A stretch of 64,000 nt of DNA from Diplonema japonicum (Eukaryota > Protista > Euglenozoa: Diplonemea). Positions 1 through 35,449 of the stretch are shown piece after piece. The notes under the pieces are model-generated. The model searched no databases, was not told the origin of the DNA, and saw nothing but the letters and a program-made list of their open reading frames with translations. The DNA is taken from positions 124,001-188,000 of the forward strand of contig OZ025758.1 of assembly GCA_964019335.1 (NCBI GenBank). The letters are read 5' to 3'. The translations under genes and the position numbers were made by a program. The number at the start of each line of letters is the position of its first letter. The first letter of the stretch is position 1.

Positions 1-3000
1 CAACACCCTCCCCACGAGGTCGTCGATCTCCAAATCCAAGAAGTGCTCGGCGTGCGTCACCGACACGAGCGTCTTCATCTGGTCGGCCGCCGCGTTGTCC
101 TGCGGCGTCCGCGTGCTCAAGCGGCGGAGGCTCACCCCGAACACCTGCACCGTCGGGTCCAGCTTCTCCATCGCCACCTTCAGCTTGTCCTCGTCCGAGA
201 CCTTTCCGCTCGTCACCAGCAGCACCGCCTGCGCCCTCGTCGTCGGGCTCTGGCTGGAGAAGATCGTGTGGATGTGCTCCATCGTCCTCTCCGTGAAGCG
301 GCCTCCGTTTCCTCCTCCGATCATGTTGACAGAGTGGAAGGCGAGGTCCCCGAGGAGCTGGTTCACGTCGCCGGACAGCAACCCGGCCGCCGACGGGGTC
401 GACGGCGTCGTCGGGCTCGTCACCAGCATCGGCTGCACGTCGGTCCCCATCTGCACGAAGGCCACCCTCGTCCCCTCCGCCTTCGCCGCCGCCTTCGGCA
501 CGATGTACGAGTCCCCGTTCAACGGGAGGTCCCGCACCCAGTCCTTCAGCATCTCCATCAGCGCCTCGAACCCGTTCGGGTGTCTCCCGAACCCCCACCC
601 CATCGGCATCGTCCCGTCGAACGCCACCACCATGTCCACCGGAGGGCAGGCTCCGAAGGCCGCCTCCACGCACGCCGACCTCGTCTCCACCCAGAAGCAC
701 GACGGCTCCGCCGCGCACTCGCAAGGCTTCCCGTCGTGTCGCATGCACGTCGACGGCACGCAGATGTTGCTCCCCTGCTCGTCGAAGGCGCACGCCGCGT
801 CCGAAACACAGTCTCCCTTCGTCGTCCACCTCGAGCAGTAGGTCTCCTTGCAGAAGGCGGGCGACGCCGTCACGTCCCACTCGCACCCCGCCTCCGCGAT
901 GCACGACCCTTCCTCCAGGTGCCCCACGCACCTCTTCTTCTCACACTTCGCGTTGGTGTTCCACACGCACTTCGCGTCCTCCTCGCACGGCTTCGCCGAG
1001 GCGTGCGTGCACGCCTTCACCCCGCACACCGACGCCGTCTGGTCCCACTCGCACCGGTCCCCATCCGCCGTGCAGTCCACCGCCTCCGCGTGCACGCACT
1101 CCTTCTTCTCGCACTTCACCCCGTTCACCCACTCGCACCCCGCGAGGTCCGACACGCACGCGGGCTCCGTGTGGTGCTGGCACGGCGACGGCTCGCACCT
1201 GTCGTTCATCCAGTCGCACTCGTAGTCTTGCAGGCACTTTTGCTGGTCCGCGTGCGCGCACACCTTCTCCTTCGAGCACGTCGCGTCCCCGCTCACGTTG
1301 AAGCGGCACCTGTACGCCGGGTCCGACAGGTCCTCGCACAGCTCCTTCGAGCAGTACTGCAGGCACGGTGACACGGTGCACGCCACCAGCCCCTCGTCCC
1401 ACGCGCAGCCCGAGTCGCGGTTGCACTCCGCCGACCCCTTGTGGAAGGAGCACGGGAGGTGCGAGTCCGTCGTCTTCAGCTCCACCAGCCAGCTTCCCCA
1501 GGCGGTGCTCGGGTTGCACCACTTGTCGAACACCTTCTCCTTCAGGTCGTCGATCGCGATGTTTGCGAAGTGTGCCGCCGTCGGCTCCGTCACGATCGGC
1601 TTCAGCGACGCCTCCGCCTCGTTGTCCACCACCGCGTGCGAGTCGCTGCGTCGCACGACGATCCCGACCAGGTGCGCCCCCGCCGACTGGATCTTCGCCA
1701 GCGGGTCCGCGAGCCTGTTCTCGTCCATCACCGGGCTCCCCGACAGCACGAGCACGATCTTCTTCCTCCCGTCCGCGGGGTACAGGGGCCCCGACAACAG
1801 ACCAGCCGCCATGTCGAGGGCGCTCGCCAGGAAGGTGTCCTTCGCCATGTGGAAGTGCTCCTGGAACGACAGGTCCTGCCTCAGCTCGGGGACGTAGCCG
1901 GAGAGCCTCCCCTTCGCCCCGTCGGGGGACACCAGCGCCGACCCCGGGACCTTCCCGCTCGCGTCCACGAGCCTCTCGTCCCCGCCAAACTGCACCACCG
2001 CGACACGCGCCGACCCGCGCGCGTACTGCGTCGGGTCCTTCCCGGCCGCCCCGACGTCGCCGGGGAGCGGCAGCAGGTACACCCAGTCCTTCAGCATCTC
2101 GATCAGGGCGAAGTAGCCGTTCGGGTGCCTCCCGAAGGGCTGCGTCATCACGCCGCTCCCGTCCAGCAAGACCACGATGTCCATCGTCGGGCACGCCCCG
2201 TAGTGCACGTCCACGCACGTCCCGTCGTGCCAGAAGCAACCGGGGTCCGTCGTGCACGCGCAGTGCTCGTGCACGTCCTCGCACCGCTTCGTCCCGCAGG
2301 TCCCGAAGTCCCAGGTGCACGCCGGCTCCAAGTCGCACGTCGTCTCGTTGTACTTCGCGCAGTACTTCTCCTTGCACATTCCGGGCGAGGTCGTCGGGTC
2401 CCACTCGCACTGGCTCTCCGTCGCCGACGAGCAAGACAGCTCGTCCACGTAGCCCACGCACGGCTTCTCCACGCACGCCCCCGTGTCCTTCTCGAAGTCG
2501 CACCACACCTTGTTCTCCGCCGCCTCGCAACAGGTCTGGTTTCCGGCCGGGCACGACACGCACCTCCTCGGCTTGCACACCGCGCCGATCCGGTTCGCGT
2601 CCGACGTGTCCCAGGTGCAGGTCTCCGCGAGGTCCTTGCACCCCACCTCCGTCCTCTGCGTCTTGCACGGCTCGAGGGTGCACACCCCGACCACCGAGTC
2701 CCACACGCAGCTCGTGGGGTCCAACAGGCACGGCTCCTCGTCGCCGTGCTTGCACGGCTTCTCCACACACGTGTTGTTCCCGTTGTCCCACATGCACTCC
2801 GCGTCCCTCGCGCACGCGGGCGCCGTGTCGTGGCTGCACGGCGTCTCCTTCTCGCACCCCTGCGTCCCCGCGTTGTAGACGCAGTGGTTGTCCACGTCCG
2901 CCGTGCACTCCGCCTCCTCGCAGTGGTCGTAGCAAGGGGTCGCCCCGCAGCTCAGCGTCGTGTCCGACCACACGCAGCCCCCGTTTCGGTTGCAAACGAG

Positions 3001-15000: not shown

Positions 15001-15615
15001 CTCGTCGATCAGCACGTTCATGAAGTGGTCGTCGTGGTCGTCCGAGGTGATCGGCTTCAGCGCCGCCTCCGCGTCGACGTCGAGCTTCGTGTGCACCGCC
15101 GCCTTTCGCAGGACCACCCCGAAGACCCGCACCCCTTGCGAGGTGAGGAGGGCCGTCGCGGGCGCCAGAGCCGCCGTGTCCTTGATCGCCCCGTCGGTCA
15201 CGATCAGCAGCACCTTCTGCCGGGTCGAGGGGGAGAAGGCGAACATCGCCCCCGCCCAGTTCAGCCCGGTCGCGATGAAGGTGCTTCCCTGGATGTAGTT
15301 CGCCTCGTGCCAGTCGATGTCCTCCTGCAGCTCCTTCAGGTCGCCGGTGAGCGAGCCCTCCGACCCCACCCCGAGCGGCGTCTTCACCGCCTCCGGCACG
15401 GGGCCCGAGAACTGGATCAGTCCCATCCTCAGCCCGCCGTTCGGCGCCGTCGAAGCCTTCCCGACCGTGCGGTCCTCCCCGGTCAGGGGGAGGGTCATCG
15501 CCCAGTCCCGGATCATCTCCATCATCGCGTAGAAGCCGTTCGGGTGCCTCCCGAAGGCCTCGCTCATCGACCCGGACCCGTCCAGCAGCAGCACCACGTC
15601 CAACACGGGGCACTC
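1..15615 (-). repeat. Giant ORF: vWA domains 6-15 (starts near 15610, 14070, 11655, 10060, 8520, 6955, 5365, 3780, 2195, 645)
   Basis: MIDAS-position motifs in order: DGSGS, DGSGS, DGSAS, DGGVS, DGSAS, DGGVS, DGSAS, DGSGS, DGSGV, DGTMP. Spacing is ~1.55-1.6 kb with C..C..CxW repeats between, except where the lectin module intervenes. Confidence 0.88.
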
Positions 15616-27600: not shown

Positions 27601-30600
27601 GGGAGACCCGTGGAAGATGTCGACCGCGTCCTCCAAAGCTGCCGCCATGTAGGTGAGGGAGCTCATGTGGTTCGTCTCGTGCCAGTCCAGGTCGTTCTCC
27701 AACTCGGACAGGTCGCCCGTGAGCTGGCCGTTGGAGCAGGTGCGGCCCCCCGAGAGGCGCGGCATCGGGCACTGCTTCCGGTACTTTCGCCCGTCGCATC
27801 CGTCGGCCCCGTTCCTGCACACCCAGTACTCGTTCTCGATGGAGAACTGCACGAAGGCCAGACGGAAGGTTCCCCCCGTCACCTTCGAGTTCACCCCGAC
27901 CGTGTTGTCCTCCCCGGTCAGGGGAAGCGTTCGCATCCAGTCCCGCAGCATCTCCAGCATCCCGTAGTAGCCGTTCGGGTGCGACCCGAAGCGCGCGTTC
28001 ATCGACCCGCTCCCGTCCAGCACGAACGCGACGTCGAGGTCTGGGCAGCTCGAGGTCTGCACGTCCTTGCACTTCGGTGCGGGCGGCGTCACAGACGGGT
28101 CCCAGTAGCACTTCTTGTCGGCCGCGCAGTCGCAGTTGTTCGTGTGGTCGGAGCAGCGCGCCGGGTAGCAGTACGGTCCCTTGTTGTCGCTCCCCGGTCG
28201 GCACTCCGGGTCGCTCGTGCAGGCCCCCTGGTCGATCGTCCCCATCGTCGTCGGGTTCGGTCCCAGCCCGGGGTACTTCGTGTTGTGCTTCGTGGTGCAC
28301 ACGGTCGGTTGGCACGAGGCCGGCGTCGTCCCGGAGCTCCAGTGGCACCTCGGGTCGTGGTCGCACTTCACCTCGTCGTCCCCGTACTGCGGGCAGTAGT
28401 CGGGGACGCACTCGTTCTTCGTCGCGTCCCAGTGGCACAGCCCCGTCTGCCTCCCGCAGTCCGGCTGGTTCAGAGGCTGGCAGCGGTCCTGCGAGCAGAC
28501 GCTGCTCGCGGCGTTCCACGAGCAGCTGTCGCAAGCCTTGCAGTCTGCCTGCGTCCTCGCCACCGTGCACTTCTTCTCCACGCACATCACCCCCGTCCAC
28601 TCACAGTCGCTGCTCACCGCGCAGCTCCCTGGGGTCGGGTACGGGCACCGCGTGTCCCTGCACACCGAGTTCTCGCAGTCCCAGGCGCAGTTCGGGTCGC
28701 TCTTGCACGCCGCCGCGTCCGTCGTCGCCGTGCACGTCGCGACCGGCTTGCACACCGGCGGGTCCACCGCCGTGTCCCACTGGCAGTCTGCGTTCGGCGC
28801 CTTCAAACACTTCTCCCGCACGAAGATCGCTCCGCAGGGCTTCGGGTCGCACTTGGTCCCGTCCCACTTGCACAGGAGGTCCGGGTCGTTCACGCAGGCC
28901 TGCTGGTCCGTGTACTCGCACACCTTCCTCACGCACACGTTGTCCGGGGTCTTCCAGTTGCACGTGGGGTCTGCATCGCAGCAGCTCTTGTCGCAGCACT
29001 TCGCGCAGTGGGTCTCCGAGCAGGTCCCTCGGATCGCCGACTTCACCGACGACCCGCAGATGATGGTCGCGCGCTGGAGCTTGCACTTCTCACAGTCGTA
29101 CATCCCCTTGTACTGCTGCGGGATCCCCTGGCAGTTCAGCTTCGGGCAGCCGGTCCCCGACGAGCAGCTCGACAGACGCGGGGTCTGCCACTCGCACACA
29201 GGGTCGGCGTTGCACTCGTCCTTGAAACCCCAGGTCGCGCACTGGAAGTGCGTCGCGGTCACCGGAGACACCAGCACCTTTCCGAACTTCGAGGTCGGGT
29301 CGCAGAAGGGTTCCAACACCTCCCCCGGGATCTCGTCCAGCATCAGGTTCATGAAGTGGTCGTCACGCGGCGTGCTCACCAGCGGCTTCAGCTTCGCCTC
29401 CGCGTTGTCGTCCTGGAAGGTGTGGTAGCTGAACCTCCTCATGATGATCCCGAAGACCACAACGTCCTCGTCCCGAAGCTTCTGCTGCGCGTCGTCCAGA
29501 ATCCTCGGGTAGCTGGGCTTCCAGCGCGAGTCGCACCCCCTCGGGCACTGCCCGCAGGACGTCCCGGCGCTGCAGGCGTCGCCGTCGTAGTCCGTCAAAC
29601 CCCCGTCCGCGATGATGATCACCACGTGCTTCCTGTGCGGCGGGCTCTGCGAGGGGAGGAAGGTGTGGTCCGCCACGTCCATGAGGGCGTCGTGGATGTA
29701 GGTCCACTGCGACTGGTAGTTCGCCTCGTGCCAGTCGATGTCTCCCATCAGCTCGTTGATGTCTCCGGAAAGGAGACCGTCCGTGCACTGCCCGACCGCG
29801 CAGTTCGTGGGGTGGTCCTCGCTCGGCTTCGCCTCCGCCTTCGAGAACTGGATGAAGGTGAGACGGAAGCCGCCTCCCTTCGCGCTCGAGCTCGCCCCGA
29901 CCGTGTGGTCCTCCCCGGTCAGGGGAAGCGTCCTCACCCAGTCCCTCAGGGTCTCCATCAGCCCGTAGAAGCCGTGCGGGTGGTTCCCGAAGGACCTCGA
30001 CATCGACCCGGACCCGTCCAGCACGAAGGCCACGTCCAGATCCGGGCAGGTCGAGAAGGTCGTCTTCGAGCAGTGGCCGTTCGCCCCCGTCTTGTCCACC
30101 ACCCACGTGCAGGCAGGGTCCTGCACGCAGTCGCACTTCTTCCCGCTGTGCTTGTCGCACCCGGTCAGCACGCACACGTCCGGCTGCTGCCACGCGCACT
30201 TCGTGTTCCCCGCGCACGAACCCTGCGAGGTCAGCGCCCCGCACTCCGTCGGCAGGCAGATCGACGGGCTCGACGTCACGTCCCAGTGGCACGCCCTGTC
30301 TTGGTCGCACCGCAGCTCTCCCAAATGCTTCTGGCACCGGCCCTCCTCGCACTTCGACAGCGGGTCGTTCCACACGCAGAACGGGTCGTTCTCGCACTGC
30401 TGCATCGTCACGTGCTGGCACTTCTCCTGCGTGCAGTAGTCGACGAGTGTTGAAGGAGGCCCCGCCGGAGCCGGCGTCGTCAGCGGCACCCACTTGCACC
30501 CGGACTCCTGCAAGCACGTCCCCTCCTTCGTGTGCAGGCAAGCCTTCGGGTTGCACGCGGGCGCCCGCATCACGTCGAACTCGCACACGTTCAGGAAGCA

Positions 30601-32415
30601 GTAGTCCGGGTTCCCGGCGGGAGGGCTGCACGGCGCGGGCATCTCCACCGCCACCGCCACGCACGCCTGCTCGTTCGTGTGCGTCCTGCAAGGGTTCTCC
30701 ACGCAGGTCGACGGGGTCGCCCACATCACGTTCCACAAACACTTCGAGTCGCTCCTGCAGGACGACGCGTCCGTGTGGCCCGCGCACCCGGCAGGCTCCC
30801 TCCTGCAGTCCGACCCGTCCCACGCGCAACCGGCGCGGGCCAAACACGTCGTCTGCGTGCACAGCACGTAGCACTCCGACACCTGACACAGCGGCGTCTT
30901 CGAGGTGTCCCAGAAGCAGGCGCTGTCCGCCATGCACGACCCCTCGTCGCCGTTCCCGGAGCACAGGGGCTTGCTCGACGGGTCGAGGCACCGTCCGGAC
31001 TCCCACGCGCACTTCGGCGAGGCGGCGAGGCACCTGCACTTCTCCGTCACGTCGCTGCACACAAGCGTCTGGCACTTCTTGTCCCCGGCGATCTGGGAGT
31101 TCCAGTGGCACGGTCCGCCCGTCGTCCTGTCGGCGTTGCAGTCCTGCTCCTCCACGTGCGTCACCGCGCAGTAGTTGTCCACGCACTCCGCGGGGCGCTT
31201 CCTCGTGTCCCAGTCGCATCCCAGGTCCGCCTCGCAGGTCGGCTCCGTCGGGTACGAGTGGCACCCCCAGTCCACGCACACCCCGTCCTTCTGAGAGATG
31301 TCCCACTTGCACGAGCCGATCGGGAGCTGCGCCTCGCACGCCCCCTGGTTCGTCGCCCCGCCGCACCCGGAGGTCAAGACCTGCGACCCGTACACGTCGT
31401 CCTTGTTCACGCACAGGTCGCCGACACCCCCCCACTCGCACACGTACCCTTCGATGTTCGTGTGGGCGTTCGGGTAGTCGTTCCACTCGCCGTTCCCGTA
31501 GTAGTGTCCGTAGTCCTCACCGGTCGTGTCGCACGTCCCGGGGCAGGTCTTCGAGTACTCGTTCGGCTCTCCGGACTCCCAGTTCGTGAAGGCTCCCGCT
31601 GCAGGTTGGAAGCCCGCGCCCTTCCCGGTCCCGATCAGGGTCCCCTGCCCGCAGTCTGGTCCGGAGCACGGCGTCTTCGTCGCGGGGAGCGGGTACCCCA
31701 GGTCGCAGGCCGAACGCTGGGCCCCCGTCGCCGCCACGTTGTAAGGCGGGCACCCCTCGGGACCCGTCAGCCAGCGCCACTCCCCCTCCTGCGCCAGATC
31801 CCCGCTTCCGATCCACCCCTCGCCGTGCAGCTTCGCCGAGGCCACATCCTGCTCGTCCTGCGAAGTGATGGTGATGAGGTACCCCACGAGCCCCAGCACA
31901 TCCTTCGAGGTGTCCGCGCACTCCGCCTGCGCCTCGTCCCAGTGGCAGTTCCCTGCTGTGTTGCAGTTCACGCTGTTCTTCGGGTAGTACTCGTAGAAGT
32001 TTCCGGTGTGTGTGGAGTACATGGCGTGCCCGAAGTTGTAGGTCAAGCGGCGGGAGGTTCCAGCTCCCGACGTCGACTTGAAGGTCACAGACGAGATCGC
32101 CTGCGCGTACTCGTCGATCGTCGCATCCCCTGACATCTGCAGGATCCCCGTTGTCCTGTCGAAGGTGGGGGTGATCCCGAGCCCCGCACACGCTCCACAG
32201 GTCAGCGTGTCCGCCGCAGGGTCGAACCCATCCTCCACGTCCACCACGGACCCGCTGATCTTCGTCCCACAGCTGCACGCACCAGACGTGAAGGTGATGT
32301 CCGCACACTTCACGTCAGGGAACGGCGTCATGGGCACTCCCTGGTTGTACGCTGCCCCGAAGCACGAGGCTGCTAGCGACAGCAGCACCGCAGGGCGGTG
32401 CAATGCATGCGCCAT
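1..32415 (-). CDS. Giant (>10,805 aa, C-terminus outside window) secreted multi-vWA / C-type lectin / EGF-like Cys-rich adhesin-like protein
   Basis: ATG at 32415 reads MAHALHRPAVLLSLAASCFGAAYNQG (signal peptide). The same frame at positions 60..1 still reads vWA sequence (VTHAEHFLDLEIDDLVGRVL). The ORF track lists no minus-strand ORF in this frame between 1 and 32415, as expected if no stop occurs. The long plus-strand ORFs in codon register are its antisense shadows. GC3 bias is very strong. Confidence 0.93.
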   Translation of the reverse strand, partial: MAHALHRPAVLLSLAASCFGAAYNQGVPMTPFPDVKCADITFTSGACSCGTKISGSVVDVEDGFDPAADTLTCGACAGLGITPTFDRTTGILQMSGDATIDEYAQAISSVTFKSTSGAGTSRRLTYNFGHAMYSTHTGNFYEYYPKNSVNCNTAGNCHWDEAQAECADTSKDVLGLVGYLITITSQDEQDVASAKLHGEGWIGSGDLAQEGEWRWLTGPEGCPPYNVAATGAQRSACDLGYPLPATKTPCSGPDCGQGTLIGTGKGAGFQPAAGAFTNWESGEPNEYSKTCPGTCDTTGEDYGHYYGNGEWNDYPNAHTNIEGYVCEWGGVGDLCVNKDDVYGSQVLTSGCGGATNQGACEAQLPIGSCKWDISQKDGVCVDWGCHSYPTEPTCEADLGCDWDTRKRPAECVDNYCAVTHVEEQDCNADRTTGGPCHWNSQIAGDKKCQTLVCSDVTEKCRCLAASPKCAWESGRCLDPSSKPLCSGNGDEGSCMADSACFWDTSKTPLCQVSECYVLCTQTTCLARAGCAWDGSDCRREPAGCAGHTDASSCRSDSKCLWNVMWATPSTCVENPCRTHTNEQACVAVAVEMPAPCSPPAGNPDYCFLNVCEFDVMRAPACNPKACLHTKEGTCLQESGCKWVPLTTPAPAGPPSTLVDYCTQEKCQHVTMQQCENDPFCVWNDPLSKCEEGRCQKHLGELRCDQDRACHWDVTSSPSICLPTECGALTSQGSCAGNTKCAWQQPDVCVLTGCDKHSGKKCDCVQDPACTWVVDKTGANGHCSKTTFSTCPDLDVAFVLDGSGSMSRSFGNHPHGFYGLMETLRDWVRTLPLTGEDHTVGASSSAKGGGFRLTFIQFSKAEAKPSEDHPTNCAVGQCTDGLLSGDINELMGDIDWHEANYQSQWTYIHDALMDVADHTFLPSQSPPHRKHVVIIIADGGLTDYDGDACSAGTSCGQCPRGCDSRWKPSYPRILDDAQQKLRDEDVVVFGIIMRRFSYHTFQDDNAEAKLKPLVSTPRDDHFMNLMLDEIPGEVLEPFCDPTSKFGKVLVSPVTATHFQCATWGFKDECNADPVCEWQTPRLSSCSSGTGCPKLNCQGIPQQYKGMYDCEKCKLQRATIICGSSVKSAIRGTCSETHCAKCCDKSCCDADPTCNWKTPDNVCVRKVCEYTDQQACVNDPDLLCKWDGTKCDPKPCGAIFVREKCLKAPNADCQWDTAVDPPVCKPVATCTATTDAAACKSDPNCAWDCENSVCRDTRCPYPTPGSCAVSSDCEWTGVMCVEKKCTVARTQADCKACDSCSWNAASSVCSQDRCQPLNQPDCGRQTGLCHWDATKNECVPDYCPQYGDDEVKCDHDPRCHWSSGTTPASCQPTVCTTKHNTKYPGLGPNPTTMGTIDQGACTSDPECRPGSDNKGPYCYPARCSDHTNNCDCAADKKCYWDPSVTPPAPKCKDVQTSSCPDLDVAFVLDGSGSMNARFGSHPNGYYGMLEMLRDWMRTLPLTGEDNTVGVNSKVTGGTFRLAFVQFSIENEYWVCRNGADGCDGRKYRKQCPMPRLSGGRTCSNGQLTGDLSELENDLDWHETNHMSSLTYMAAALEDAVDIFHGSPSHRAHVLVIITDGQMNPLEPQKSTEIPPIRRKLDAEGVVTFGVVVRKGRQHTQADIEAEETLKPITSDDHDDHFVNVPLDDMLDEVFNDFCNPAGRFGAAIAQQVQIQNNGGGGGSTTTNPPAQSGAVPCSKWGVKLECRSDQACDWKTPAPSSCPGNNGCRNLNCLELPSAQRAAGMSCSNCLLSGGAVSCSFGTNNPVGSGYCGATKCEEHCSQGPCEQDTANDCFWDVDRCQRKVCQYPDKNRCESDPDSMCMWDTSKVPATCVPKTCLHFSQGTCNADKSCQWDPASQTCKDKTPDCGTIYDKLDCLNHVSGSCDWDCDADKCVKKVCGETSQGACQGSPAGCSWDAGSGACQKTRCTTAFTENACISDEACVWSGSSCAESKCYKHATEPTCDRDTDCHWDPTGCAGCKEKYCFKTFKDSGSCNADPKGQCTWDTANNKCVNKLCDTYNNPAMGPNRMCDCQADPRCVVDRSNPSNPVCRDQTFTQCPDLDVVVAFDGSSSMKKRFGTHPNGFDGLMEALRDWVTALPLTGERAGVPSTDRNGKVRVAFNQWDKGVRLAECPSCACVPAPGTTGDGIPTNSVMNRQGMNRPADNCGKLTGDRGQLHADIDWHESVGRRSQTLVKEAEEFAGEVFKESPSYRKKILLIFTDGRIQDKGSLGPAGAVLRAEGVQTFGIVLSRGNPTNKDQQNLEILKEIVTPPEDSHALMMQIDEAHQVLDDFCNPNSVFGALITSGSSTNGGGGGGSGSAVHSPACNTIQRTADCEARKTCEWSGLAAACTDHPCFRHCSETDCVADTTNKCKFNSGTLQCEKSACTDNTNAPDCRNSGCTWDPSKNPPCYDGPCQATDRMTCNNLGPQCTWDASIRPTAMCVKTPCFYPSKAPCAADANCEWDEVCADPSDQKCVPKRCSQPGHQTQAGCVADSWCVWTSSLTCELGLCAKYPTEKCCDHNDACHWSVTTFPPVCTEKYCPRTYPSQGTKTQCDADSKCMWDSGKLLCVEEDCSKLAKCPCRAHPDCYWDAQHNKCTDQKFGGCPTMDVVMLLDGSGSMDAWFGNHPHGFYGLIEILRDWVRTLPLTGEPAGTNTGPGPASGGLRLGFVQFSGQNPWRRRRGRSEAIQTPGGVGTGGHLSGDLREINRDLDWHERNYMGEGTMIEKGLVMVGDMFDASHQHAVRPRVLIIFTDGKIYDPNKLAPARRVLDQEDVQTFGIVLRKQQQHTKADWDAEATLKPITSDPHDDHFQNLMLDEVPGSVLGDICDPNGKWGHLVAALAKKTGGGGGTQTQGGKHQPCRNYNDPHTCSVDPGCEWHPAGFECKDSPCMAHCDKTSCVKDLTNLCTWNGQECWKDTKCAYTDRTSCLSSPDLCTWDKTGKCVSPPCTPNKNQADCNADQNGCSWVPNPNGGGNSICVVSPCSSAFQSTCLADPNCKWDYPLCGSTTNLQCMQKGCDTIGSRSTCTADVHCVWDPALSSCKDRQCAQFRTERCCDKDPLCKWDPAASPALCAVKKCPAIKTQKKCDTQSDCMWDATANPAHCTDLDCSKFPNMCPCNQHSKCYWKPGAGTTGAGGCVTIQFGECPTLDIVLVLDGSGSMAARFGNHPHGFDALMEMMRDWIRTLPLNGEPATVGINSKQGNGGVRVGMVQFSGRNRRRSEARKTPWGKGTAGRLSGVLPELEDDIDWHEDNYMGEGTMIEMGLSMAADIFHESPVDGRQRVLFIFTDGKIYDPNSLSGARAELDREGVQTFGIVVRKAVQHTKADWDAEATLKPITSDPHDDHFKNVMIDEVPDLMRGICDPNGPWGHLIVKNPPQPSSGYHLPCPDYKTQGTCKKDPGCSWSDVGAVCLNSPCLMHCSDSACRADPNNKCTWVNGSICTNAPDPKCDCEFNTGDPVYDEQMCRSDPKCQWDAASGACQHDQCAPGNVGALTCGAKNQKCVDPNPAPCKDDWHCDCVPPAVRVGGGSPGKFAAQCELDECVVQTCPTCARTTCSDANQDCNDPNPTTTSLNDWTCTCRDPYKGMAVANAAVCQLDECVVQTCPTCAKTTCSDKGQTCHDPDTTTLSDWTCTCPPPSTQSMLTAAVPSCDVDECKLHKSTCENADQTCLDPNPAKLGDWMCKCKPPTNGSATAQVAWCQLDECVVQTCPTCAKTTCSDENQLCTDPNKAAHSTGDWKCLCKDPYKGSAIASAASCKMDECAPTCVGPTCAKTTCSAVKQICHDPDFTKLSDWTCSCPPPSKLPPVKLGPVTPGCDVDECKLHGTTCTNQKQTCQDPNKLVADDWKCVCPPPMNGTAIAQAASCQLDECVVKDCATCANDTCSSVGQTCNDPNPSVLSTLDWTCTCPPPYTGVAIANQATCVLDECATTCTGPTCAGTTCSDKNQTCHDPDTSKLSDWTCTCPPPATQSAVTAAVASCDVDECDKMKDICLNVGQVCVDPNKLVSGNWQCQCKPPMNGSATAQPAHCQLDECVVQDCPTCANDTCSSVGQSCNDPNIASTSTSDWTCTCPPPFKGVAIANQATCLIDECVEKCPTCSDNTCSNASQICNDPDHSKLSDWTCSCPPPAQKPAQLLGPVTPGCEVDECDLHKHTCTNHDQDCVDPNPSKAGDWQCKCRPPMNGTATAMPAECKLDECVVQTCPTCAKTTCSDKGQTCHDPNTAGTSTSDWTCTCPPPSTGVAIANAADCVIDECVADCPTCSNKTCVNEGQTCHDPNIASTSLSDWICTCPPPSTGFATAKAASPCVVDECKIPDNEAKCADAGQLCVDPNPTLGSRNDWECRCVVPPAVKKASAVMKPADCEYPGECKTDPEALKCTDAGHLCDDPNPSPSSTKDWVCMCAPPTKGANATASANVVCETDECVEVCPTCAQTKTSPGNLCASEGQLCEDPDKSTFGDWVCKCPTPWTGGPATTALANCTLDECVVTDCPTCSKGTCANEGQTCHDPSIDVHSLNDWICTCAPPAVGSATAKPATCVCDECKEATQVCAPANQICYDPDTSCDKKGDYVCECKAPLSGVATAKPASCEVDECLEKGATCTAAGQKCNDPDKTKLGDWQCLCPPPSTGMAVAQAAAGCALDECVEACPTCANSTCADADQTCNDPNPTTTSLSDWTCTCKPPGANSATAKAAAACVCDECLSDTVCAAANQTCFDPNTACGTPSDFECECPPPMIGKATGKAAAPCEVDECELKAATCLAQGQTCFDPDLTRVGDWECRCKPPSTGNATAMPAECVYDECVIQDCPTCANSTCSDAGQECEDLNTAPSSTSDWVCKCPPPSNHSATAKVAECDLDECKDPKKAGQCTENCDPGTLDCGQTCYDPNPTAGSVGDWMCLCPSPATGKQTAGPVVHCEYDECEEKAAVCLTEEQTCFDVDLKKLNDWTCQCPPPATGNATMRGARCLLDECVEQNCATCANDTCSKAGQECEDPDTASKGDWMCKCPPPSTHVATAKVAQCDVDECDLPQNNCTANCEGSDPKAPNCQQTCFDPNVASTSLGDWVCNCPPPTTGKAVAQAAMCAVDECEEHGATCVAEGQTCEDRNTSRLGDWECVCPPPSSGRAVAQKAKGCVLDECVSACGTCANDTCSAKQQTCEDPDTSPSSKSDWVCKCPPPSTNTATGKAAECGVDECEKQGWKCVADCRGALNCAQTCFDPDTSATSLGDWTCVCGPPSTDKAVAKAAVCTVTPCVHDNEAACEQDPDGCEWALLPSPTCKKLPCQHTTESKCEGEEGCEWLVYSGAASNKKTGAVSYEVLMPLNPFPNATCEGSCGCASETSAVVKIGSGYVSGKDSLTCGACGSSSSPPVSVNWTEGSGTLLLTGGVGADGAKLAEIVASVEFTTSSKDGARRKLSWNFGTVVAASKPACGGDEVTLIGGACVTEKCNYTTEGTCESDPFCDWIGGTTDPCVIAPCVLYPDEKECSKDEDCRYDVSSSPAMCKEKPCRAFKGSVECDAEDECMWEPGKTKCVEKECSKFDGDRCKCQAEDRCYWDVRASSPKCVESKFGECPVLDVVLLLDGSGSMSEAFGRHPNGFYAMMEMIRDWAMTLPLTGEDRTVGKASTAPNGGLRMGLIQFSGPVPEAVKTPLGVGSEGSLTGDLKELQEDIDWHEANYIQGSTFIATGLNWAGAMFAFSPSTRQKVLLIVTDGAIKDTAALAPATALLTSQGVRVFGVVLRKAAVHTKLDVDAEAALKPITSDDHDDHFMNVLIDEMPGQVLNGICDPNSKWGQLLMPAGAQQEKQAGMHMPCPQHLDQAGCAADPGCVWSSVGLSCVDSPCVAHCEEPKCSKDTLNHCEWKVVNGTTEPSCWVASLCAHGDDEAACDADEQCAWDRKKKCVERPCNQPNEVECEADPAVCEWLAGKKTCVEKPCKHTAPDDCNSDAACEWDACAGVVGGGACQKKSCDATVFTDEVACTKDTRCSWVGGACAQEPCAIHSGERCCNADGDCHWDISVSPAQCSLTYCATMNKDEPKCNSDSACVYEQNKCVEKECGKLSECECKKDTGCFWNGAKQFCAADKFGQCPTLDLVLLVDGSGSMSQSFGRHPHGFEAMMEMVRDWLTTLPLSGEKGSVGVNSAADSGKVRVGIVQFSGKNARGADPGKAEAQSAPAGVGTSGSLSGDLVELNADLDWQEDNYYGGGTMVSKGLDDVAEMFRASPNDGRQRVLIIITDGQIFDPNALSKARGELDKEKVQVFGVVVRRADAHTPIDDLAEQTLKPIVSSPHDAHFQNLMIDEVPTMVLGDICDPNGKFGSLVVGKQSGNSSSSSSSGLHKPCKQHVLTGECNADAGCVWYDATLSCADTPCVQHCDEGECKADTANTCMWEAAKGVCQKEPKVGCDSLSVTECPQNPGCELSDNKTTCLDKKCVHDTEPGCLADPDKCVWNNLKQECTERPCNYVEEAACTGDAVCDWNSGNNSLSYSKGVAMFPFASLTCDEATTTCPGKCGGLVNGAAVSIDSADYIKGKDTLECAECPALGMKTEWSASTGSLVLTSMDGQEKSLTAFAEAMAKVSFKTSSAAGKERSMTWNYGEGVFDARTGHYYRYYASETPCQSPGGVKLAACTWEKAKQACAEKSFLGTAGYLLTVTSPEETEVARDRVAGEGWMGASAAGGAWTWSTGPEAGQPISSYDNWMVGQPSAAAADAYFFPNGEWSSVDPVDDTKAVLGYACEWGGASNSPACIGSVGTVVVNAGGCIEKKCTETSRAGCVADPYCDWLVDTTTCVQKPCTEVMEELPCNKREGCHWSPSISPAMCVEEPCAKLKDTPTCNADSDCMWDDGKKKCVEKNCNDLAKCPCVEDPKCFWKASSAGSGSGSGSGSCVKNSYGECPTMDVVLLVDGSASMSQSFGHHPHGFFALMEMLGDWMKKLPLNGEAASVGAASQAGTGKVRVAVVQFSGRQQFFSPPNTWSGPVVDSVAVSPVGVGTAGRLSGVASELKSDVDWHESNYLEAGTYVAKGLKRAATVFTTSSPVDGRQRVLIVITDGMIQDAGADKDIMAQARQELDGLSVQTFGIVVRRFTQHTQTDMDAEATLKPLVSLPKDEHFMNLEIEEIPEKALNGLCDPNGLWGHLVVDPTQHQHAAASGVHQPCANSVTKTGCVADRGCTWSEALTACLESVCVAHCDQPKCEAEKAAACQWDATVEECFKKEVCKYTEATACNGDAECVWDAKKTECVETPCTYPDEKSCIADATYDCVWSTVKKECKEKPCVYNTSADCNADAGCMWEAACAKPEDQMCIVKPCTHTNETACKQDVVCTWDGGCSVATCAHYPDEKCCNSDHGCHWDVKQAPSVCSELPCRKLKSEGTCGADRGCMWEPSSATCLEKRCSEHPDKCACEADPDCYFVAKGGDPHCTFQRYGTCPTLDVVVLLDGGVSMGRKFGRHPQGFYALIEVVRDWAKTLPLSKDAAATPPAANTQTVRLAFVQFAGSELWPANDAKQALSATGYGTSEGRLTGSLEEIGKDLTFLEDNFMGSNAARQPAPQTTYLLAGMLKAASLFKTSPVDGRRRVLIIVADSPLADKDKYQTVLAELSASQVVVFGASVRPLTSQTADDLQAEADLKQVVSDPKKNHFVSVEVDQLATSLNGLCDPNSEWGKYVAETAQQQQHKPCNLHAEKLVCNKDAGCVWFDSTLSCGDSPCLTHCSEPVCKADFMNRCVWSGSACEKEEICKHVDVAACEADFECEIDNTGSCIGKKCKHDTEQGCVADPDTCVWNNIKATCEKKPCNYDNLDQCELDTDCEWKPLVPECVPKLCAYKNQTACETVEPGMCEWKKSSSNNTNECTPLPCKEYLSEIECKLDSGCDWTTECEPKYCERYAGEENACDGDGLCMWDKMEKKCVDKDCEAFQNDTCRCHKDSDCFWDKGVCKTGKFGECPTLDVVLAVDGSASMTQTFGRHPHGFYGLMEVLKGWTGKLTLSGEKAGEPTTKAGSSGKTRVGVVQFSGKPAIKIPGTDLVDGAQKTPTGTGSGGRLTGDGAELKADLVWQETNFMEGGTYLAAALDVSADMFQASPKDGRKRVLLIFTDGMVQDADKLVDARKRLEQEQVMTFGIVVRRFNTHTQTDKDAEATLKPITSKPHAEHYYNLLLDEISDTLDGLCDPSSMWGKYIVEATSQQAGVHRPCGNYKEKDPCNGDSGCVFRDVLAACVDTPCIKHCAEDLCKADTSNKCFWKGDESVCYKEEGCQTHAAEPSCNADGTCAWRDAKCVDKPCNYPDENSCTADSTYDCEWLSKDGSCQEKPCQHTEEGACNADGGCEWDTACVATGIPAVCVPKPCQYSEAGACSADARCEWGNTTQRCEVRPCVSFADERCCNHNEELAGCHWNVKQSPAICSVGPCRKFDQTNCDNERSCMWEQGKNRCVEKDCNKLTDKCACEADPDCYYSTASGKSHCTFQRYGTCPTLDVVVLLDGGVSMGRKFGRHPQGFYALIEVVRDWAQSLPLSGDAGSVATPAADSQTVRLAFVQFAGSELWAAGDSRQALTPTGPGTSEGRLTGSLEEVEKDLTFLEDNFMGGSLLTQPTPQMTYLLAGMEKAVSLFRTSPVDGRRRVLIIVTDGELDDKDQYKKVRAELDQAQVQVFGAVVRPFDTHTALDEKAQQTLEPLVASPKKGHIVNLQVDELAGSLSGLCDPNAEWGRFVGYPTGGRQPCQLHGMKDSCNKDAGCVWFDSTLSCADSPCLKHCSEAECRADHALNLCEWKSGACGKEEVCNHGQQAACEADTAGCEWLSGGNTCIGKECKHDNEQGCLADPVVCAWDNLKQECEKKRCVYDNADSCNLDAKKECVWNVEAVQCEVKKCTPYTTEEECETREPGMCEWDDQKSVGEKCTPALCKQYTSEKLCVSDDSCEWSTAVAPGTCDVKYCRKYCDVKTSICDEDECNQDPACLTDPSSSICRKKECGLLQDQCACHKEPECFWLAGEKSCVDQRYGTCPTLDVVVVFDGSASMSQVFGRHPHGFYGMVEMLRAWAKGLPLSGEKAGAASTTTSASRKVRVAFVQFSGVATAPLTKTPIAGSAVKTPAGVGTAGRLSGDFGELSADLDWHEANFMEKGTYVNLGLQMAASILQSSPTDGRRRAVYIITDGQLQDQSYLEDAKAKLDTVGAEVFGIVVRRFTSHTKVDTDAEEALKPVTSAPHSAHFVNVDMDELASEKGPLTQLCDPATAFGSSIAMGVRAGGKHQPCGTYTAKRDCMRDAGCVWSQLTCTTSPCVMHCDENTCHKDVANDCLNGWDSTDETCYRKEECAGGDSQACEAEAGCGWNATSAACGERPCYHTTEDGCLSEKEFACEWKADRSDCIVRPCVGKSTQQECEAEPRVCEWDAAAAANNNNNKEQCTPLKCVPHKDKDTCKKDVLCQWEEVAQNCVVRPCVLYENDMTCDADKKCHWDTTAAPGSCQLEPCARYENETTCDLDTTCKWVGKESACVKKTCHTIPTRCECQKDTSCFWSTQGGKARCEEQVFGKCPTLDAVLVLDGSGSMSQAFGRHPHGFYAMMEMVRDWVRTLPLSGELSSVGAGSAASTGGVRLGLVQFSGEPNSVNPATGGVVNSAQRTPLGVGTEGRLSGDLKQLEGDISWHEGNYMAQLTFIEEGLNMAADMLTNDSPLDGRRRIVIIITDGVLMDGDRLTTVRAKLQQLQVLTFGIAVRRFKAHSAEDDAAEAALKPVVSELADDHFMSLTMDEIPTEVLTGLCDPSSRWGRFVSATNGGSAGTGDGPVPCVQLDEKLVCNRNGGCVWSDTTLSCGATPCYDHCEEAECTADVDNHCVYNAGTQGCEKETPCSHDTAPACARDAECMWDNGNNTCVEKPCKHGDEEPCLLDPTSCVWDSVVGVCTLEPCKTQRTEVGCKDLAETCTWDTSDANRIGAVCKPRRCVSCPAGNQTCCEAAENKVWCDFEKDTGACVEKPCVGYVDELSCSSATESQCEWDPTTSPGMCKEKYCAKYNETTCDLEPACTWDFGTCGTKRCEDVHEHCACTTDPGCFWHDGTCVDVHYGACPTMDIVVLLDGSGVMTQPFGRHPNGYFALIEMLKDWVYLLPLPGDVGAAGKDPTQYARGSARVAVVQFGGDERLVDASGKVPGSALVSPDGAKGRLSGYVPELRQDLSFQEHFHMAKDTFLASALDMAAGLLSGPLYPADGRKKIVLVLSGSPVMDENRLADPLAKIQSAGAHLVGIVVRRSDSHAVVDNEAEASLKPIVTEPTAAHFANIAIDDLKEKVFDKWCNPSTAWGSWLVELKTTDSHLPCSFHKGSAECNRDSGCAWDEGLVACTVSPCLQYCSKELCEDLSDPAYRCRFNVSGDATCSKEKVCAHADQQKCLQDYECDWMNDRCEPSPCQHHTEPACVSDLAGCEWVNGVKCEKKECVHAEAVDCTADGDRCEWDQTASVCGVKACTHASAKPCEEDAKCVWNTNAKCEKKRCVGHLEEGSCIAEAGCEWDVTASPAFCKETYCSRWTTKGDCVSDAACAFDEQGSNICVPSTCMRHDGKPCECAAEPSCFWVETRSACVEAAFGACPPVDMVVAFDGTMPMGWGFGRHPNGFEALMEMLKDWVRDLPLNGDSYIVPKAAAKAEGTRVAFVQMGTDVQPMLVTSPTTPSTPSAAGLLSGDVNQLLGDLAFHSVNMIGGGNGGRFTERTMEHIHTIFSSQSPTTRAQAVLLVTSGKVSDEDKLKVAMEKLDPTVQVFGVSLRRLSTRTPQDNAAADQMKTLVSVTHAEHFLDLEIDDLVGRVL
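12115..12880 (-). other. Giant ORF: internal Ig/cadherin-like domain plus C-type lectin domain 2 (degenerate sugar site)
   Basis: TGSLVLTS...MAKVSFKTSS...TGHYYRYY...WEKAKQAC...GYLLTVTSPEE...GWMGAS...WTWSTGPEAG...YDNWMVGQPSA...NGEWSS...GYACEWGG. A third copy of the Ig-like domain without a lectin lies at ~16060-16380. Confidence 0.8.
16590..21830 (-). repeat. Giant ORF: tandem array of about 31 EGF-like Cys-rich repeats (~50-60 aa each)
   Basis: Recurring DEC...C...QxCxDP...DWxCxCPPP..G.A...A.C unit; about 31 DEC-type starts counted by eye, many nearly identical at nucleotide level. Confidence 0.8.
22200..30050 (-). repeat. Giant ORF: vWA domains 1-5 (starts near 30045, 28045, 26125, 24485, 22865), each preceded by Cys-rich repeats
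   Basis: Each begins CP(D/T)(L/M)D(V/I)xxxxDGS(G/S)SM, followed by FGxHPxGFY or, in #3, FGTHPNGFD; MIDAS DxSxS is intact in all five. Confidence 0.88.
31420..32350 (-). other. Domain of giant ORF: Ig/cadherin-like domain followed by C-type lectin domain 1 (EPN and WND motifs intact)
   Basis: Translation GILQMSGDATIDEYAQAISSVTFKS...TGNFYEYY...WDEAQAEC...GLVGYLITITSQDEQ...GWIGSGDLAQEGEWRWLTGPEG...FTNWESGEPNE...EDYGHYYGNGEWNDY...GYVCEWGG. Confidence 0.85.
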
Positions 32416-32550
32416 CTTCTCACACGAGTTTTTGCTTTTTGTTTGAACTCCCTTATATCCGGGTGTTCAGTAGTAGTAGCTTTTGTTGTCTCTCGATGGA
32501 TATATAGTTTTTTGTGTGTATGGGGGGGGGGGGGGGGGGAGAACCTTTGG

Positions 32551-32818
32551 TGTGTTTGAGTTGTATTGGATAAGCACGTGGGGAATAAAAAAAAAGCAGA
32601 AAAAAGAAAGAAGTGTAGGGATGAAATGAAATGGTTTCAAAAGAGCTTTGGTGTAAAATGAAACAAAATGTTTGAATCTCATTTGACATTGGGAGTCAGA
32701 GAGAGTGCATGTTGTTTCAATTTTATCAATCGGGGGAAGGGGGTGAGGAGGGCGACCGCAAAGGACAGCACTTGTTCAAAAAAAAAAAAAAGATAAAAAT
32801 GAACGAGTGTCATAAAAT
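32551..32818. repeat. Duplicated intergenic module, copy 1 (upstream of giant ORF)
   Basis: tgtgtttgagttgtattggataagcacgtg...gaacgagtgtcataaaat is nearly identical to 35450-35729. Confidence 0.92.
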
Positions 32819-35393: not shown

Positions 35394-35449
35394 GTTATTT
35401 CTTTTGTCAATAAAGCACAGAATTCTGTTAAAAAGGGAGTCTTTTAGGT

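What the first reader, a model, noticed from the sequence alone, without database searches (positions are those of the whole stretch)
1..32415. Hidden >32 kb single-exon ORF: giant vWA/lectin/EGF modular surface protein
Seen: one uninterrupted minus-strand frame of at least 10,805 codons, absent from the ORF track. Its architecture is SP - Ig-like - CTLD - [Cys repeats + vWA]x5 - ~31 EGF-like - Ig-like - [Cys + vWA]x2 - Ig-like - CTLD - [Cys + vWA]x8 or more. Known: vWA MIDAS, CTLD and EGF modules mediate adhesion and glycan binding. Inference: a >1.1 MDa adhesin or extracellular matrix/prey-capture fibre in a unicellular euglenozoan, convergent with animal ECM proteins and giant bacterial adhesins. 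I do not recognise this architecture from a characterised protein.
Basis: partly seen in the sequence, partly recalled or inferred. Interest (0 to 1): 0.88.

Follow-up and report, generated by a model that had tools for sequence, protein, structure and literature searches.

The report
Giant VWA-lectin-EGF membrane adhesin gene
The marine protist Diplonema japonicum carries a real, uninterrupted 39.4-kb gene, present as two identical tandem copies, for a 1.41-million-dalton membrane-anchored protein that is most likely a very long metal-dependent cell-surface adhesin from an undescribed diplonemid family.

Summary
The minus-strand frame runs 13,142 codons, from the ATG at window 32415 to a stop 7 kb below the window (C111:116987).

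The organism is Diplonema japonicum YPF1604 (Euglenozoa); the assembly size matches the published figure exactly.

Architecture: signal peptide, N-module, CTLD, [Cys repeats + VWA]x5, 32 EGF-like units, N-module, [Cys + VWA]x2, N-module, CTLD, [Cys + VWA]x11, two EGF, TM helix, and a 43-aa conserved tail.
- VWA is strong: 18 domains, 12 with a complete MIDAS.
- The "Ig-like" module is a beta-sandwich related to bacterial cadherin-like adhesin repeats.
- The central EGF call is probable only.
- The ~170 "CxW" repeats match no known fold.

GC3 is 94 % and paralogue dN/dS is 0.09-0.39, so the frame is coding. At least eight intact ~13,000-codon paralogues keep the same module order.

The window's copy has a twin 45,382 bp away with an identical CDS but a diverged 3' flank. 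The junction is present in four runs from three studies.

Transcription in D. japonicum was not shown, and function is inferred.

The scan found this family before, on the twin (s1-863739) and on paralogues (s1-863257, s1-862860, s1-867123). No paper describes it.

The parts
1..32415 (-). Window part of the giant CDS (codons 1-10,805 of 13,142). The rest runs to C111:116987 (L006:2987), outside the window.
   Evidence: Stop-free frame. GC3 94 %. dN/dS 0.09-0.39 against paralogues.
32353..32415 (-). Start codon and predicted signal peptide (aa 1-21, MAHALHRPAVLLSLAASCFGA).
   Evidence: First ATG of the open frame. Homologues, including the annotated D. papillatum protein, start with an equivalent hydrophobic leader. 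Signal-peptide status is read from the sequence; no predictor was run.
32032..32340 (-). N-module 1 (aa 26-128): beta-sandwich related to bacterial cadherin-like/RTX adhesin repeats.
   Evidence: AF2 pLDDT 93-98 with strands. HMM kinship with tandem repeats in bacterial proteins that carry Cadherin_4, Cadherin_3 and RTX. No Pfam or PDB sequence hit.
31411..32031 (-). CTLD 1 (aa 129-335), with an insert. It keeps EPN, a Glu and WND, the Ca2+ site-2 ligands.
30037..31398 (-). First block of 'CxW' Cys-rich repeats (aa 340-793).
   Evidence: Self-trained HMM. No Pfam hit.
22264..30036 (-). VWA 1-5 with their CxW linkers (aa 794-3384).
   Evidence: Pfam VWA 7.5e-34. HMM domain map. All five have a complete MIDAS.
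16579..21855 (-). 32 EGF-like units (aa 3521-5279), 6-8 Cys each. 30 of 32 have a D-E-C motif near the unit start. All 32 have C-x-D-[PVLR]-[NDST] and an aromatic-x-C-x-C motif.
   Evidence: HMM count. Motif counts. Atlas score 0.95 to EGF_3/EGF_CA clusters. Pfam misses them. The PDB profile's best hit is the heregulin EGF domain at E 0.12, not significant.
16066..16368 (-). N-module 2 (aa 5350-5450), with no CTLD after it.
   Evidence: HMM 1.1e-39.
13453..15600 (-). VWA 6-7 with linker (aa 5606-6321).
12550..12870 (-). N-module 3 (aa 6516-6622).
   Evidence: HMM 3.9e-47.
12091..12549 (-). CTLD 2 (aa 6623-6775). The sugar/Ca2+ site is lost: QPS replaces EPN and WSS replaces WND.
   Evidence: Sequence. 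Aligned with CTLD 1 in A1 at 36 % identity.
40..11646 (-). VWA 8-15 with ~320-aa CxW linkers (aa 6924-10792). VWA 16-18, two EGF, the juxtamembrane domain, the TM helix and the tail lie below the window (L006:2990-8476).
   Evidence: C-terminal Pfam EGF_Teneurin 24.7 bits against a 24.3 cut-off. TM and tail.
3769..4743 (-). Representative CxW linker (aa 9225-9549), used for structure prediction: nine ~30-aa units, each a short helix plus a beta-hairpin.
1..37397 (.). Window part of the upper copy of a 45,382-bp tandem duplication (giant CDS + ankyrin gene + AA10 LPMO). It is identical to C111:71600-116029 except for a ~300-bp variable stretch at window 35639-35938.
   Evidence: no mismatch anywhere in the identical block apart from that stretch, so the two CDS copies are identical. 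The junction and both 3'-flank types appear in runs from three studies.

Best explanation
This is a genuine protein-coding gene of Diplonema japonicum. It encodes a 13,142-aa (1.41 MDa, pI 4.8, 1,141 Cys) type I membrane protein that most likely acts as a very long, divalent-cation-dependent cell-surface adhesin. Shown: an N-terminal hydrophobic leader and one C-terminal TM helix place about 13,050 residues outside the cell and 43 inside. The ectodomain has 18 VWA domains about 520 residues apart. The spacers are disulfide-rich rods of ~30-aa 'C..C..CxW..C' units, and the middle holds a run of 32 EGF-like units. Twelve VWAs keep the full MIDAS (DxSxS + Thr + Asp). A profile of them is closest to collagen-binding integrin I domains, collagen VI and mussel thread matrix protein. 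The membrane-distal tip is a beta-sandwich packed on a true C-type lectin fold that keeps EPN, Glu and WND. Inferred: in sea water the MIDAS sites, loaded with Mg2+ or Mn2+, would bind acidic side chains of protein ligands. The distal CTLD, loaded with Ca2+, would bind mannose/GlcNAc/fucose-type sugars. This gives multivalent attachment to prey, detritus, substrate or other cells far from the membrane. The conserved cytoplasmic motif KF[DN]DFEM[ED]DG would couple the protein to a cytosolic partner for sorting, cytoskeleton linkage or uptake. The gene belongs to a family of at least eight intact ~13,000-codon paralogues, built from a module set shared across diplonemids.
Against: There is no direct evidence of transcription or translation in D. 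japonicum. The four runs laid were contigs of unknown kind, with no spliced-leader or poly(A) ends seen. No transcript-derived protein fragment was found for the C-terminus. No ligand is known. Six VWAs have degenerate MIDAS sites, and CTLD2 has lost its sugar site. About 40 % of the protein (the CxW repeats) has no recognisable fold or family. The EGF assignment of the central tract is not statistically secured. The signal peptide and TM helix are read from the sequence, not from a predictor.
Confidence: 0.65

Rival explanations
1. It is a structural surface coat (glycocalyx or 'mucin-like' barrier), not a ligand-specific adhesin. The many copies of a half-micron-scale acidic, disulfide-rich rod would form a protective or hydrating layer, with VWA-VWA or VWA-EGF self-association building a mesh, as collagen VI and matrilins do in animal matrix.
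For: The protein is acidic (pI 4.8) and extremely Cys-rich. There are at least eight near-full-length paralogues. Collagen VI VWA domains are among the best solved relatives. The D. papillatum homologue was auto-named 'Halomucin'.
Against: There are only 48 N-glycosylation sequons in 13,142 aa and no long Ser/Thr/Pro mucin tracts. The distal lectin head with an intact EPN/WND site and 12 intact MIDAS sites points to binding of external ligands. The conserved cytoplasmic motif suggests coupling to the cell interior.
Confidence: 0.15
2. It is a pattern-recognition or phagocytic receptor for bacteria (prey or the species' endosymbionts). The CTLD head recognises bacterial glycans, and the conserved tail triggers uptake at the feeding apparatus.
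For: CTLD1 is of the EPN type, like the mannose-type immune lectins it matches (CL-K1, SP-D, DC-SIGN, mannose receptor). The tail motif is conserved. D. japonicum harbours bacterial endosymbionts (PMC13598402).
Against: There is only one functional-looking CTLD against 18 VWAs. No known endocytic motif was recognised in the tail when reading it. Nothing places the protein at the cytostome, and the feeding-apparatus paper does not mention such proteins.
Confidence: 0.15
3. It is not a functional gene: either an assembly artefact (a falsely duplicated or chimeric repeat region) or an untranscribed relic.
For: The two copies are 100 % identical over 42.6 kb, longer than HiFi reads. Transcription is not shown. 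One paralogue (C11) is split by a frameshift.
Against: P(no stop) is about 1e-147, and the frame shows codon bias and purifying selection. At least eight independent loci keep ~13,000-codon frames and the same module order. The unique junction and both 3' flanks appear without differences in four runs from three studies. In the run whose depths look most like single-copy DNA (X2), the CDS depth is about twice the junction depth. Internal VWAs are only 29-72 % identical, so a mis-assembly collapse or expansion is unlikely.
Confidence: 0.04

Closest known systems
Diplonema papillatum KAJ9442392.1, auto-annotated 'Halomucin' (4,686 aa), plus unnamed 5.5-7.5 k aa ENA proteins of a related genome
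   Same: True homologues: 42-53 % identity in the head and first VWAs. They use the same module set (N-module, CTLD, VWA, CxW repeats, EGF-like units); most start with a hydrophobic leader, and P0017 and several of the ENA proteins end in a hydrophobic C-terminal segment.
   Different: They are a third to a half of the size, with other module orders (for example N-L-V4-N-L-V-N-L-N-L-L-TM, or V4 + ~60 EGF-like). None is characterised. The 'Halomucin' name is an automatic label, and I did not test any kinship with the archaeal protein.
Integrin alpha I domains, collagen VI and matrilin VWA domains (animal adhesion and matrix)
   Same: VWA fold family with a DxSxS-Thr-Asp MIDAS. These are the best solved relatives of the VWA profile. 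VWA is combined with EGF-type Cys-rich spacers, and the layout (PSI-like unit + VWA + EGF + TM + short tail) recalls the integrin beta subunit (my knowledge).
   Different: Sequence similarity is limited to the VWA (E 5e-8). There is no integrin propeller or hybrid domain and no collagen triple helix. The protein has 18 VWAs on one chain, and the spacers are an unrecognised repeat.
Animal C-type lectins of the EPN class (CL-K1, SP-D, DC-SIGN, mannose receptor, CEL-I)
   Different: Only 17-28 % identity. CTLD1 has a ~50-residue insert and is packed on a bacterial-type beta-sandwich. CTLD2 has lost the site. Sugar binding is untested.
Giant bacterial RTX/cadherin-like adhesins (tandem ~130-aa beta-sandwich repeats), and bacterial N-module + CTLD proteins (e.g. 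Opitutales/Congregicoccus WP_442888592.1)
   Same: The N-module matches the conserved core of their repeats (10-42 stretches per protein). The fused N-module + CTLD head occurs in bacteria at ~39 % identity. The design logic is the same: a long rod with a ligand-binding tip.
   Different: Here the module occurs three times, not in long tandem arrays. There are no RTX repeats or type I secretion signals. The anchor is a eukaryotic TM helix, and the rod is disulfide-rich.
Apicomplexan TRAP/CTRP adhesins and the Entamoeba Gal/GalNAc lectin (protist surface adhesins; comparison from my knowledge)
   Same: Type I proteins that combine MIDAS VWA domains or a lectin with Cys-rich spacers and a short acidic cytoplasmic tail. 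The Entamoeba lectin's Cys-rich chain was the top, but non-significant, Foldseek row for the CxW linker (E 0.2).
   Different: No TSR domains, no detectable sequence homology, and 10-20 times larger. The resemblance is functional and architectural only.

Membership tests
VWA domain (Pfam PF00092) | Profile match above the curated threshold | tested here: met
   VWA E 7.5e-34, 1.2e-24 and 1e-53 on the three 3,000-aa pieces (cut-off 23.8 bits). A self-trained HMM maps 18 domains.
VWA domain (Pfam PF00092) | MIDAS: DxSxS + Thr + Asp | tested here: met
   Complete in 12 of 18 (V01-V08, V10, V12, V13, V17). Degenerate in V09, V11, V14, V15 and V16, and partly in V18. The same positions are degenerate in paralogues.
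VWA domain (Pfam PF00092) | Metal-dependent ligand binding | not testable with these tools
   Needs recombinant domains with and without Mg2+/Mn2+/EDTA.
C-type lectin-like domain (Pfam PF00059) | Profile match above the curated threshold | tested here: met
   CTLD1 scores 23.0 bits against a 22.6 cut-off, which is marginal. PDB phmmer hits CLEC4F, CD23 and DC-SIGN at E 7e-4 to 4e-2.
C-type lectin-like domain (Pfam PF00059) | CTLD fold | tested here: met
C-type lectin-like domain (Pfam PF00059) | Ca2+ site-2 / sugar ligands (EPN or QPD, Glu, WND) | tested here: met
   CTLD1 has GEPN...GED...WND, conserved in the consensus of 30 homologues. CTLD2 has QPS and WSS, so the feature is not met there. 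Actual sugar binding was not tested.
EGF / calcium-binding EGF | Profile match (Pfam EGF, EGF_CA) | tested here: not met
   Central tract: only PF00008 at E 0.11 for one unit, and no EGF_CA. The C-terminal pair does match: EGF_Teneurin 24.7 bits against 24.3, and EGF_2 21.8 against 22.1.
EGF / calcium-binding EGF | Six-Cys pattern with aromatic-x-C-x-C, and an acidic (D/N)-x-(D/N)-E-C entry | tested here: inconclusive
   All 32 units have [WFY]-x-C-x-C and C-x-D-[PVLR]-[NDST]. 30 have D-E-C, but only 5 have the full D-x-D-E-C. The atlas scores 0.95 to EGF_3/EGF_CA clusters. The PDB profile's best hit is the heregulin EGF domain in Cys register, at E 0.12. No structure was predicted for this tract.
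PSI domain (plexin-semaphorin-integrin), as a candidate for the CxW unit | Profile or fold match | tested here: inconclusive
Ig-like / bacterial cadherin-like beta-sandwich (N-module) | Beta-sandwich fold and kinship to a named family | tested here: inconclusive
   AF2 shows seven to eight strands at pLDDT 93-98. The fold search was filled by the CTLD, so the module was not tested on its own. HMM kinship with bacterial repeats that overlap Pfam Cadherin_4 and CLSTN_C stretches. No Pfam or PDB hit for the module itself.
Halomucin (Haloquadratum walsbyi) | Homology to the archaeal protein | not tested
   This is only the automatic name of the D. papillatum homologue. No comparison was run, and no paper links the two.

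The most novel reading that the evidence does not exclude
The ~170 'CxW' units are a new disulfide-rich fold that builds a stalk hundreds of nanometres long. The family would then be a diplonemid invention that mounts a head of bacterial origin (cadherin-like sandwich + EPN C-type lectin, acquired by gene transfer) and integrin-type VWA beads on that stalk. Its conserved tail motif would link prey or substrate capture to the cell's uptake or motility machinery. That would make it a major, so far unknown, determinant of how one of the ocean's most abundant heterotroph groups attaches and feeds.
Probability: 0.25. Interest if true: 0.75.

Novelty: new variant of a known kind. Interest (0 to 1): 0.55.

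Why it matters
[quoted passage not shown] This genome is published but not yet annotated. Here, at least eight intact 39-kb genes encode 1.4-MDa membrane proteins that combine integrin-type metal-dependent adhesion domains, a sugar-binding lectin head shared with bacterial adhesins, and an unrecognised disulfide-rich repeat. This gives concrete candidates for diplonemid adhesion and prey recognition. It also gives a clear annotation target, because gene finders tend to break or miss such ORFs. The CxW repeat is a candidate new fold. Finally, the 42.6 kb of perfect identity beside a diverged 3' flank is a neat case of concerted evolution or very recent duplication.

Tried and rejected
- Pfam found nothing for the N-module, the CxW blocks or the central Cys tract.
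- Single-sequence PDB searches with a VWA, an EGF-like stretch and a CxW linker gave nothing or spurious zinc-finger hits. Profile searches gave only a non-significant heregulin EGF hit for the EGF-like units and spurious PHD fingers for the N-module.
- The atlas gave no usable hit for the CxW linker.
- Foldseek and VIA found no significant match for the CxW linker.
- The search for transcript-derived fragments of the C-terminus (385-1,225 aa band) was blank, and so was the search for small proteins carrying the CxW linker. Both searches are blind outside their length band.
The source organism of the ENA giants is therefore unnamed.
- In read laying, all four runs were contigs of unknown kind. 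The many 'joints' had sides of only 18-26 letters (one reached 123) in low-complexity sequence, so I do not read them as introns or splice events. No SL or poly(A) loose ends were recognisable.
- My first CTLD HMM drifted into the Cys repeats (52 'hits'). I discarded it and rebuilt it from the two real CTLDs.
- Literature and supplement searches for VWA, lectin, halomucin and adhesion in diplonemids found nothing relevant.
- I considered and rejected the 4,299-codon plus-strand ORF as a gene. It is the antisense of a frame that almost never uses TTA, CTA or TCA.
- I considered a retrocopy origin. There is no spliced-leader relic upstream of the ATG, and the duplicated unit includes neighbouring genes.
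Full report
OBSERVATION

The minus strand of the window is stop-free from 32466 to 1, which is 10,822 codons. The first ATG is at 32415 and is followed by a hydrophobic leader, MAHALHRPAVLLSLAASCFGA.

The window is G000:C111:124001-188000. After fetching the DNA below it, the frame continues to a TGA at C111:116987-116989. The total is 13,142 codons, or 39,429 nt with the stop.

From the strand's base composition, about 335 stops would be expected, so P(no stop) is about 1e-147. Twenty shuffles gave at most 417 stop-free codons. GC at codon positions 1, 2 and 3 is 55, 51 and 94 % in this frame only.

The window also holds a 4,299-codon ORF on the plus strand. This is a by-product: the codons TTA, CTA and TCA, whose complements are stops, occur only 12 times in 13,142 codons.

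Between paralogues, dN/dS in the minus frame is 0.09-0.39 over 1,483-1,971 codons.

ORGANISM

G000 has 62,535,345 bases. That is exactly the assembly size given for Diplonema japonicum YPF1604 (GCA_964019335), which was built from PacBio HiFi reads with Hi-C scaffolding. The paper states that annotation is still to come (PMC13598402). Earlier notes of this scan named the same species. I count the size match as my own check.

ANATOMY

I trained HMMs on the protein's own modules and read the sequence directly. The order of parts is:
- signal peptide, aa 1-21
- N-module, aa 26-128
- CTLD1, aa 129-335
- about 12 'CxW' units
- [VWA + CxW linker] x5, aa 794-3384
- 32 EGF-like units, aa 3521-5279
- N-module 2, aa 5350-5450
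- [CxW + VWA] x2
- N-module 3, aa 6516-6622
- CTLD2, aa 6623-6775
- [CxW + VWA] x11, up to aa 12347
- about 12 further CxW units
- two EGF domains, aa ~12830-12900
- a ~170-aa juxtamembrane domain
- a TM helix (AALVLVLWIVVVALIAFLIFALI)
- a 43-aa tail

The protein is 1,410,414 Da with pI 4.8. It has 1,141 Cys and 48 N-glycosylation sequons.

MODULE IDENTITIES

VWA. Pfam VWA hits reach E 1e-53. Aligning the 18 domains shows a full MIDAS (DxSxS, Thr, Asp) in 12 of them. Sites are degenerate in V09, V11, V14, V15 and V16, and partly in V18. A profile of 15 VWAs finds integrin alpha1 I domains (4.6e-8), collagen VI, mussel PTMP1, integrin alpha2/alphaX/alphaL, and a Gram-positive pilus adhesin.

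It is confidently predicted as a beta-sandwich. It has no Pfam or PDB sequence relative. The exhaustive HMMER search found 2,429 cluster representatives for the head. Many repeat the N-module 10-42 times. Those checked are bacterial-type proteins with RTX, Cadherin, Cadherin_4 and Cadherin_3 domains, and my hits overlap the Cadherin_4 and CLSTN_C stretches. The fold search was dominated by the CTLD, so the N-module's fold was not tested on its own.

Central tract. All 32 units have aromatic-x-C-x-C and C-x-D-[PVLR]-[NDST], and 30 have D-E-C. The atlas places the tract with EGF_3, EGF_CA and EGF clusters at 0.95. Pfam misses it. The PDB profile's best hit, the heregulin EGF domain in Cys register, is not significant at E 0.12. 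I call the tract 'EGF-like, probable'.

TANDEM TWIN

A second copy lies exactly 45,382 bp lower on the same contig. The identical blocks are C111:116982-159638 and 159939-161397, matching 71600-114256 and 114557-116015. Both ORFs are intact and identical.

The duplicated unit also carries the ankyrin gene and the AA10 LPMO gene.

Identity stops 5 nt past the stop codon. There is a 6-nt indel, then about 27 similar bases, then only patchy 82-87 % matches in collinear order. So the 3' flanks are old homologues, while the 42.6 kb of CDS and upstream DNA are identical. This fits gene conversion or a very recent re-duplication inside an older tandem pair.

I laid contigs of four runs from three studies on L006:1-6000, which covers the LPMO twin, the junction, the 3' UTR and the last ~1,000 codons. 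The unique junction is covered without differences in all four runs. Both 3'-flank states, with and without the 6-nt indel at L006:2976, are seen. In run X2 the depth is 72-91 over the junction and about 139 over the CDS, as expected for two copies. No contig bridged a junction end by 31 letters or more. Copy number could therefore exceed two, but the duplication is not merely an artefact of this assembly.

None of the runs is on record as RNA, and no SL or poly(A) ends were recognisable. Transcription is therefore not shown. In run X1 the depths are about 540 over the CDS, 300 over the lower-copy 3' UTR and 24-76 over the upper-copy UTR. These do not fit simple two-copy DNA and might reflect RNA, but I cannot tell.

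FAMILY

Searching the genome with the head and with the C-terminus finds intact open frames of 12,987-13,165 aa on C111 (two), C63 (two), C64, C61, C5 and C14. The C11 copy is split by one frameshift into 4,578 + 8,524 codons (break between 779117 and 779526). The C99 copy is 12,056 + 617 codons. Shorter relatives are on C30 (7,438), C9 (8,600), C29 (4,125), C35 (three of ~1,900) and C13 (three of ~600).

I fetched C63a and C14 in full. C63a has exactly the same module order. C14, at about 55 % identity, differs only by one extra VWA before the EGF tract. The positions with degenerate MIDAS motifs are conserved: DGGVS at V09 and V11, with equivalents at C14 V10 and V12.

Within one protein the VWAs are only 29-72 % identical. 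This is therefore an old array of individually conserved positions, not a young homogenised repeat.

The TM helix, an EECCEGL-x-LGE-x-CL juxtamembrane motif and a cytoplasmic KF[DN]DFEM[ED]DG motif are conserved in all nine loci, even at 43-51 % identity.

RELATIVES ELSEWHERE

Giant relatives of 5,570-7,575 aa, at 44-53 % identity, lie on megabase-scale ENA contigs of another eukaryote. The D. papillatum protein KAJ9442392.1 (4,686 aa) is auto-named 'Halomucin'. These relatives use the same modules in other orders: V4 + ~60 EGF-like, N-L-V6-N-V4, and N-L-V4-N-L-V-N-L-N-L-L-TM.

Head-bearing proteins occur in Trinity transcriptomes of Hemistasia, Sulcionema, Lacrimia, Diplonema ambulator and the kinetoplastid Apiculatamorpha. 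Relatives that carry the N-module + CTLD head are therefore transcribed in other species.

A fused N-module + CTLD head also exists in an Opitutales bacterium at about 39 % identity. This leaves open a bacterial origin for the head.

CONTEXT

The eight other large ORFs of the window (ankyrin, AA10 LPMO, MetE, a beta-helix protein, a 559-aa CTLD protein, an aminotransferase and two ORFs with no Pfam hit) lie on the minus strand. This matches the unidirectional, polycistronic clusters described for D. papillatum (PMC10161547). By inference, transcription of the giant gene is likely.

MECHANISM

Shown: the topology, the module identities and the conservation described above.

Inferred: the protein is a type I surface protein whose rod of disulfide-locked CxW and EGF-like units carries VWA 'beads' and ends in a lectin head. 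In sea water, which is rich in Mg2+ and Ca2+, intact MIDAS sites would bind acidic residues of protein ligands. CTLD1 would bind mannose-type glycans. Together these give multivalent attachment to prey, particles, substrate or other cells. The conserved tail would connect to a cytosolic partner.

Rival readings are a structural coat and a bacterial-recognition or uptake receptor. 'Not a functional gene' is very unlikely.

NOVELTY

No paper in the held library mentions VWA, C-type lectin or 'halomucin' proteins in diplonemids. Homologues are in sequence databases without characterisation.

The scan has already reported the twin copy (s1-863739) and paralogues (s1-863257, s1-862860, s1-867123) with the same overall reading. 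My tests agree with that reading. They add:
- fold confirmation of the lectin head
- the bacterial kinship of the N-module and of the fused head
- position-by-position conservation of MIDAS states
- the conserved tail motif
- the selection test
- independent-run support for the tandem junction

I rate the finding as a new variant of a known kind (a giant modular surface adhesin) that contains one unrecognised repeat.

Noticed in passing
window 1-37397 and C111:71600-116015: There are 42.6 kb of perfect identity between the tandem copies, yet the 3' flank diverges 5 nt after the stop codon (a 6-nt indel, then patchy 82-87 % matches). This suggests gene conversion or a very recent re-duplication inside an older tandem pair.
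   Followed up: partly
L006:~2745-2783 (C111:~116745-116783), 3' UTR of the window's copy: An A39 tract on the mRNA strand lies about 205 nt after the stop. It is present only in this copy's 3' flank. All four runs have their lowest depth there.
   Followed up: no
window 32416-32690 and 35460-35740 (minus strand): The ~270 nt upstream of the giant gene's ATG are nearly identical to the ~270 nt upstream of the ankyrin gene. The ankyrin gene is also preceded by a partial spliced-leader-like sequence (…TTCTGTGCTTTATTG). This fits a retrogene inserted into the giant gene's upstream region with a long target duplication, as earlier notes proposed.
   Followed up: partly
window 1-32415, plus strand: Antisense ORFs of 4,299, 2,266, 1,691 and 1,172 codons lie opposite the giant CDS. 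They are explained by the near-absence of TTA, CTA and TCA codons at 94 % GC3, and are not genes.
   Followed up: yes
window 35982-37043 (minus): A secreted-type AA10 lytic polysaccharide monooxygenase (Pfam LPMO_10, 1e-43) with a Cys-rich C-terminal extension is part of the duplicated unit, so it is present twice.
   Followed up: partly
window 45923-47602 (minus): A separate 559-aa ORF with a C-type lectin domain (Lectin_C, 30.6 bits) lies in the same gene cluster. The genome also has tandem ~600-aa N-module + CTLD genes on C13 (706219-714703).
   Followed up: no
G000:C11:765792-804700: A paralogue is split into 4,578 + 8,524 codons by a single frame change between 779117 and 779526. It is either a young pseudogene or a homopolymer error in the assembly.
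   Followed up: partly
window 62686-62724 (minus): A full 39-nt spliced-leader sequence (GACCAATGATTCTAAAGCTACAGTTTCTGTACTTTATTG) stands alone in the genome.
   Followed up: partly
L006:1518 and 1524 (LPMO twin): Run X1 alone shows G>A at two places 6 nt apart in the LPMO gene, in one contig at about 18 % of the depth. This could be a paralogue or a strain variant.
   Followed up: no
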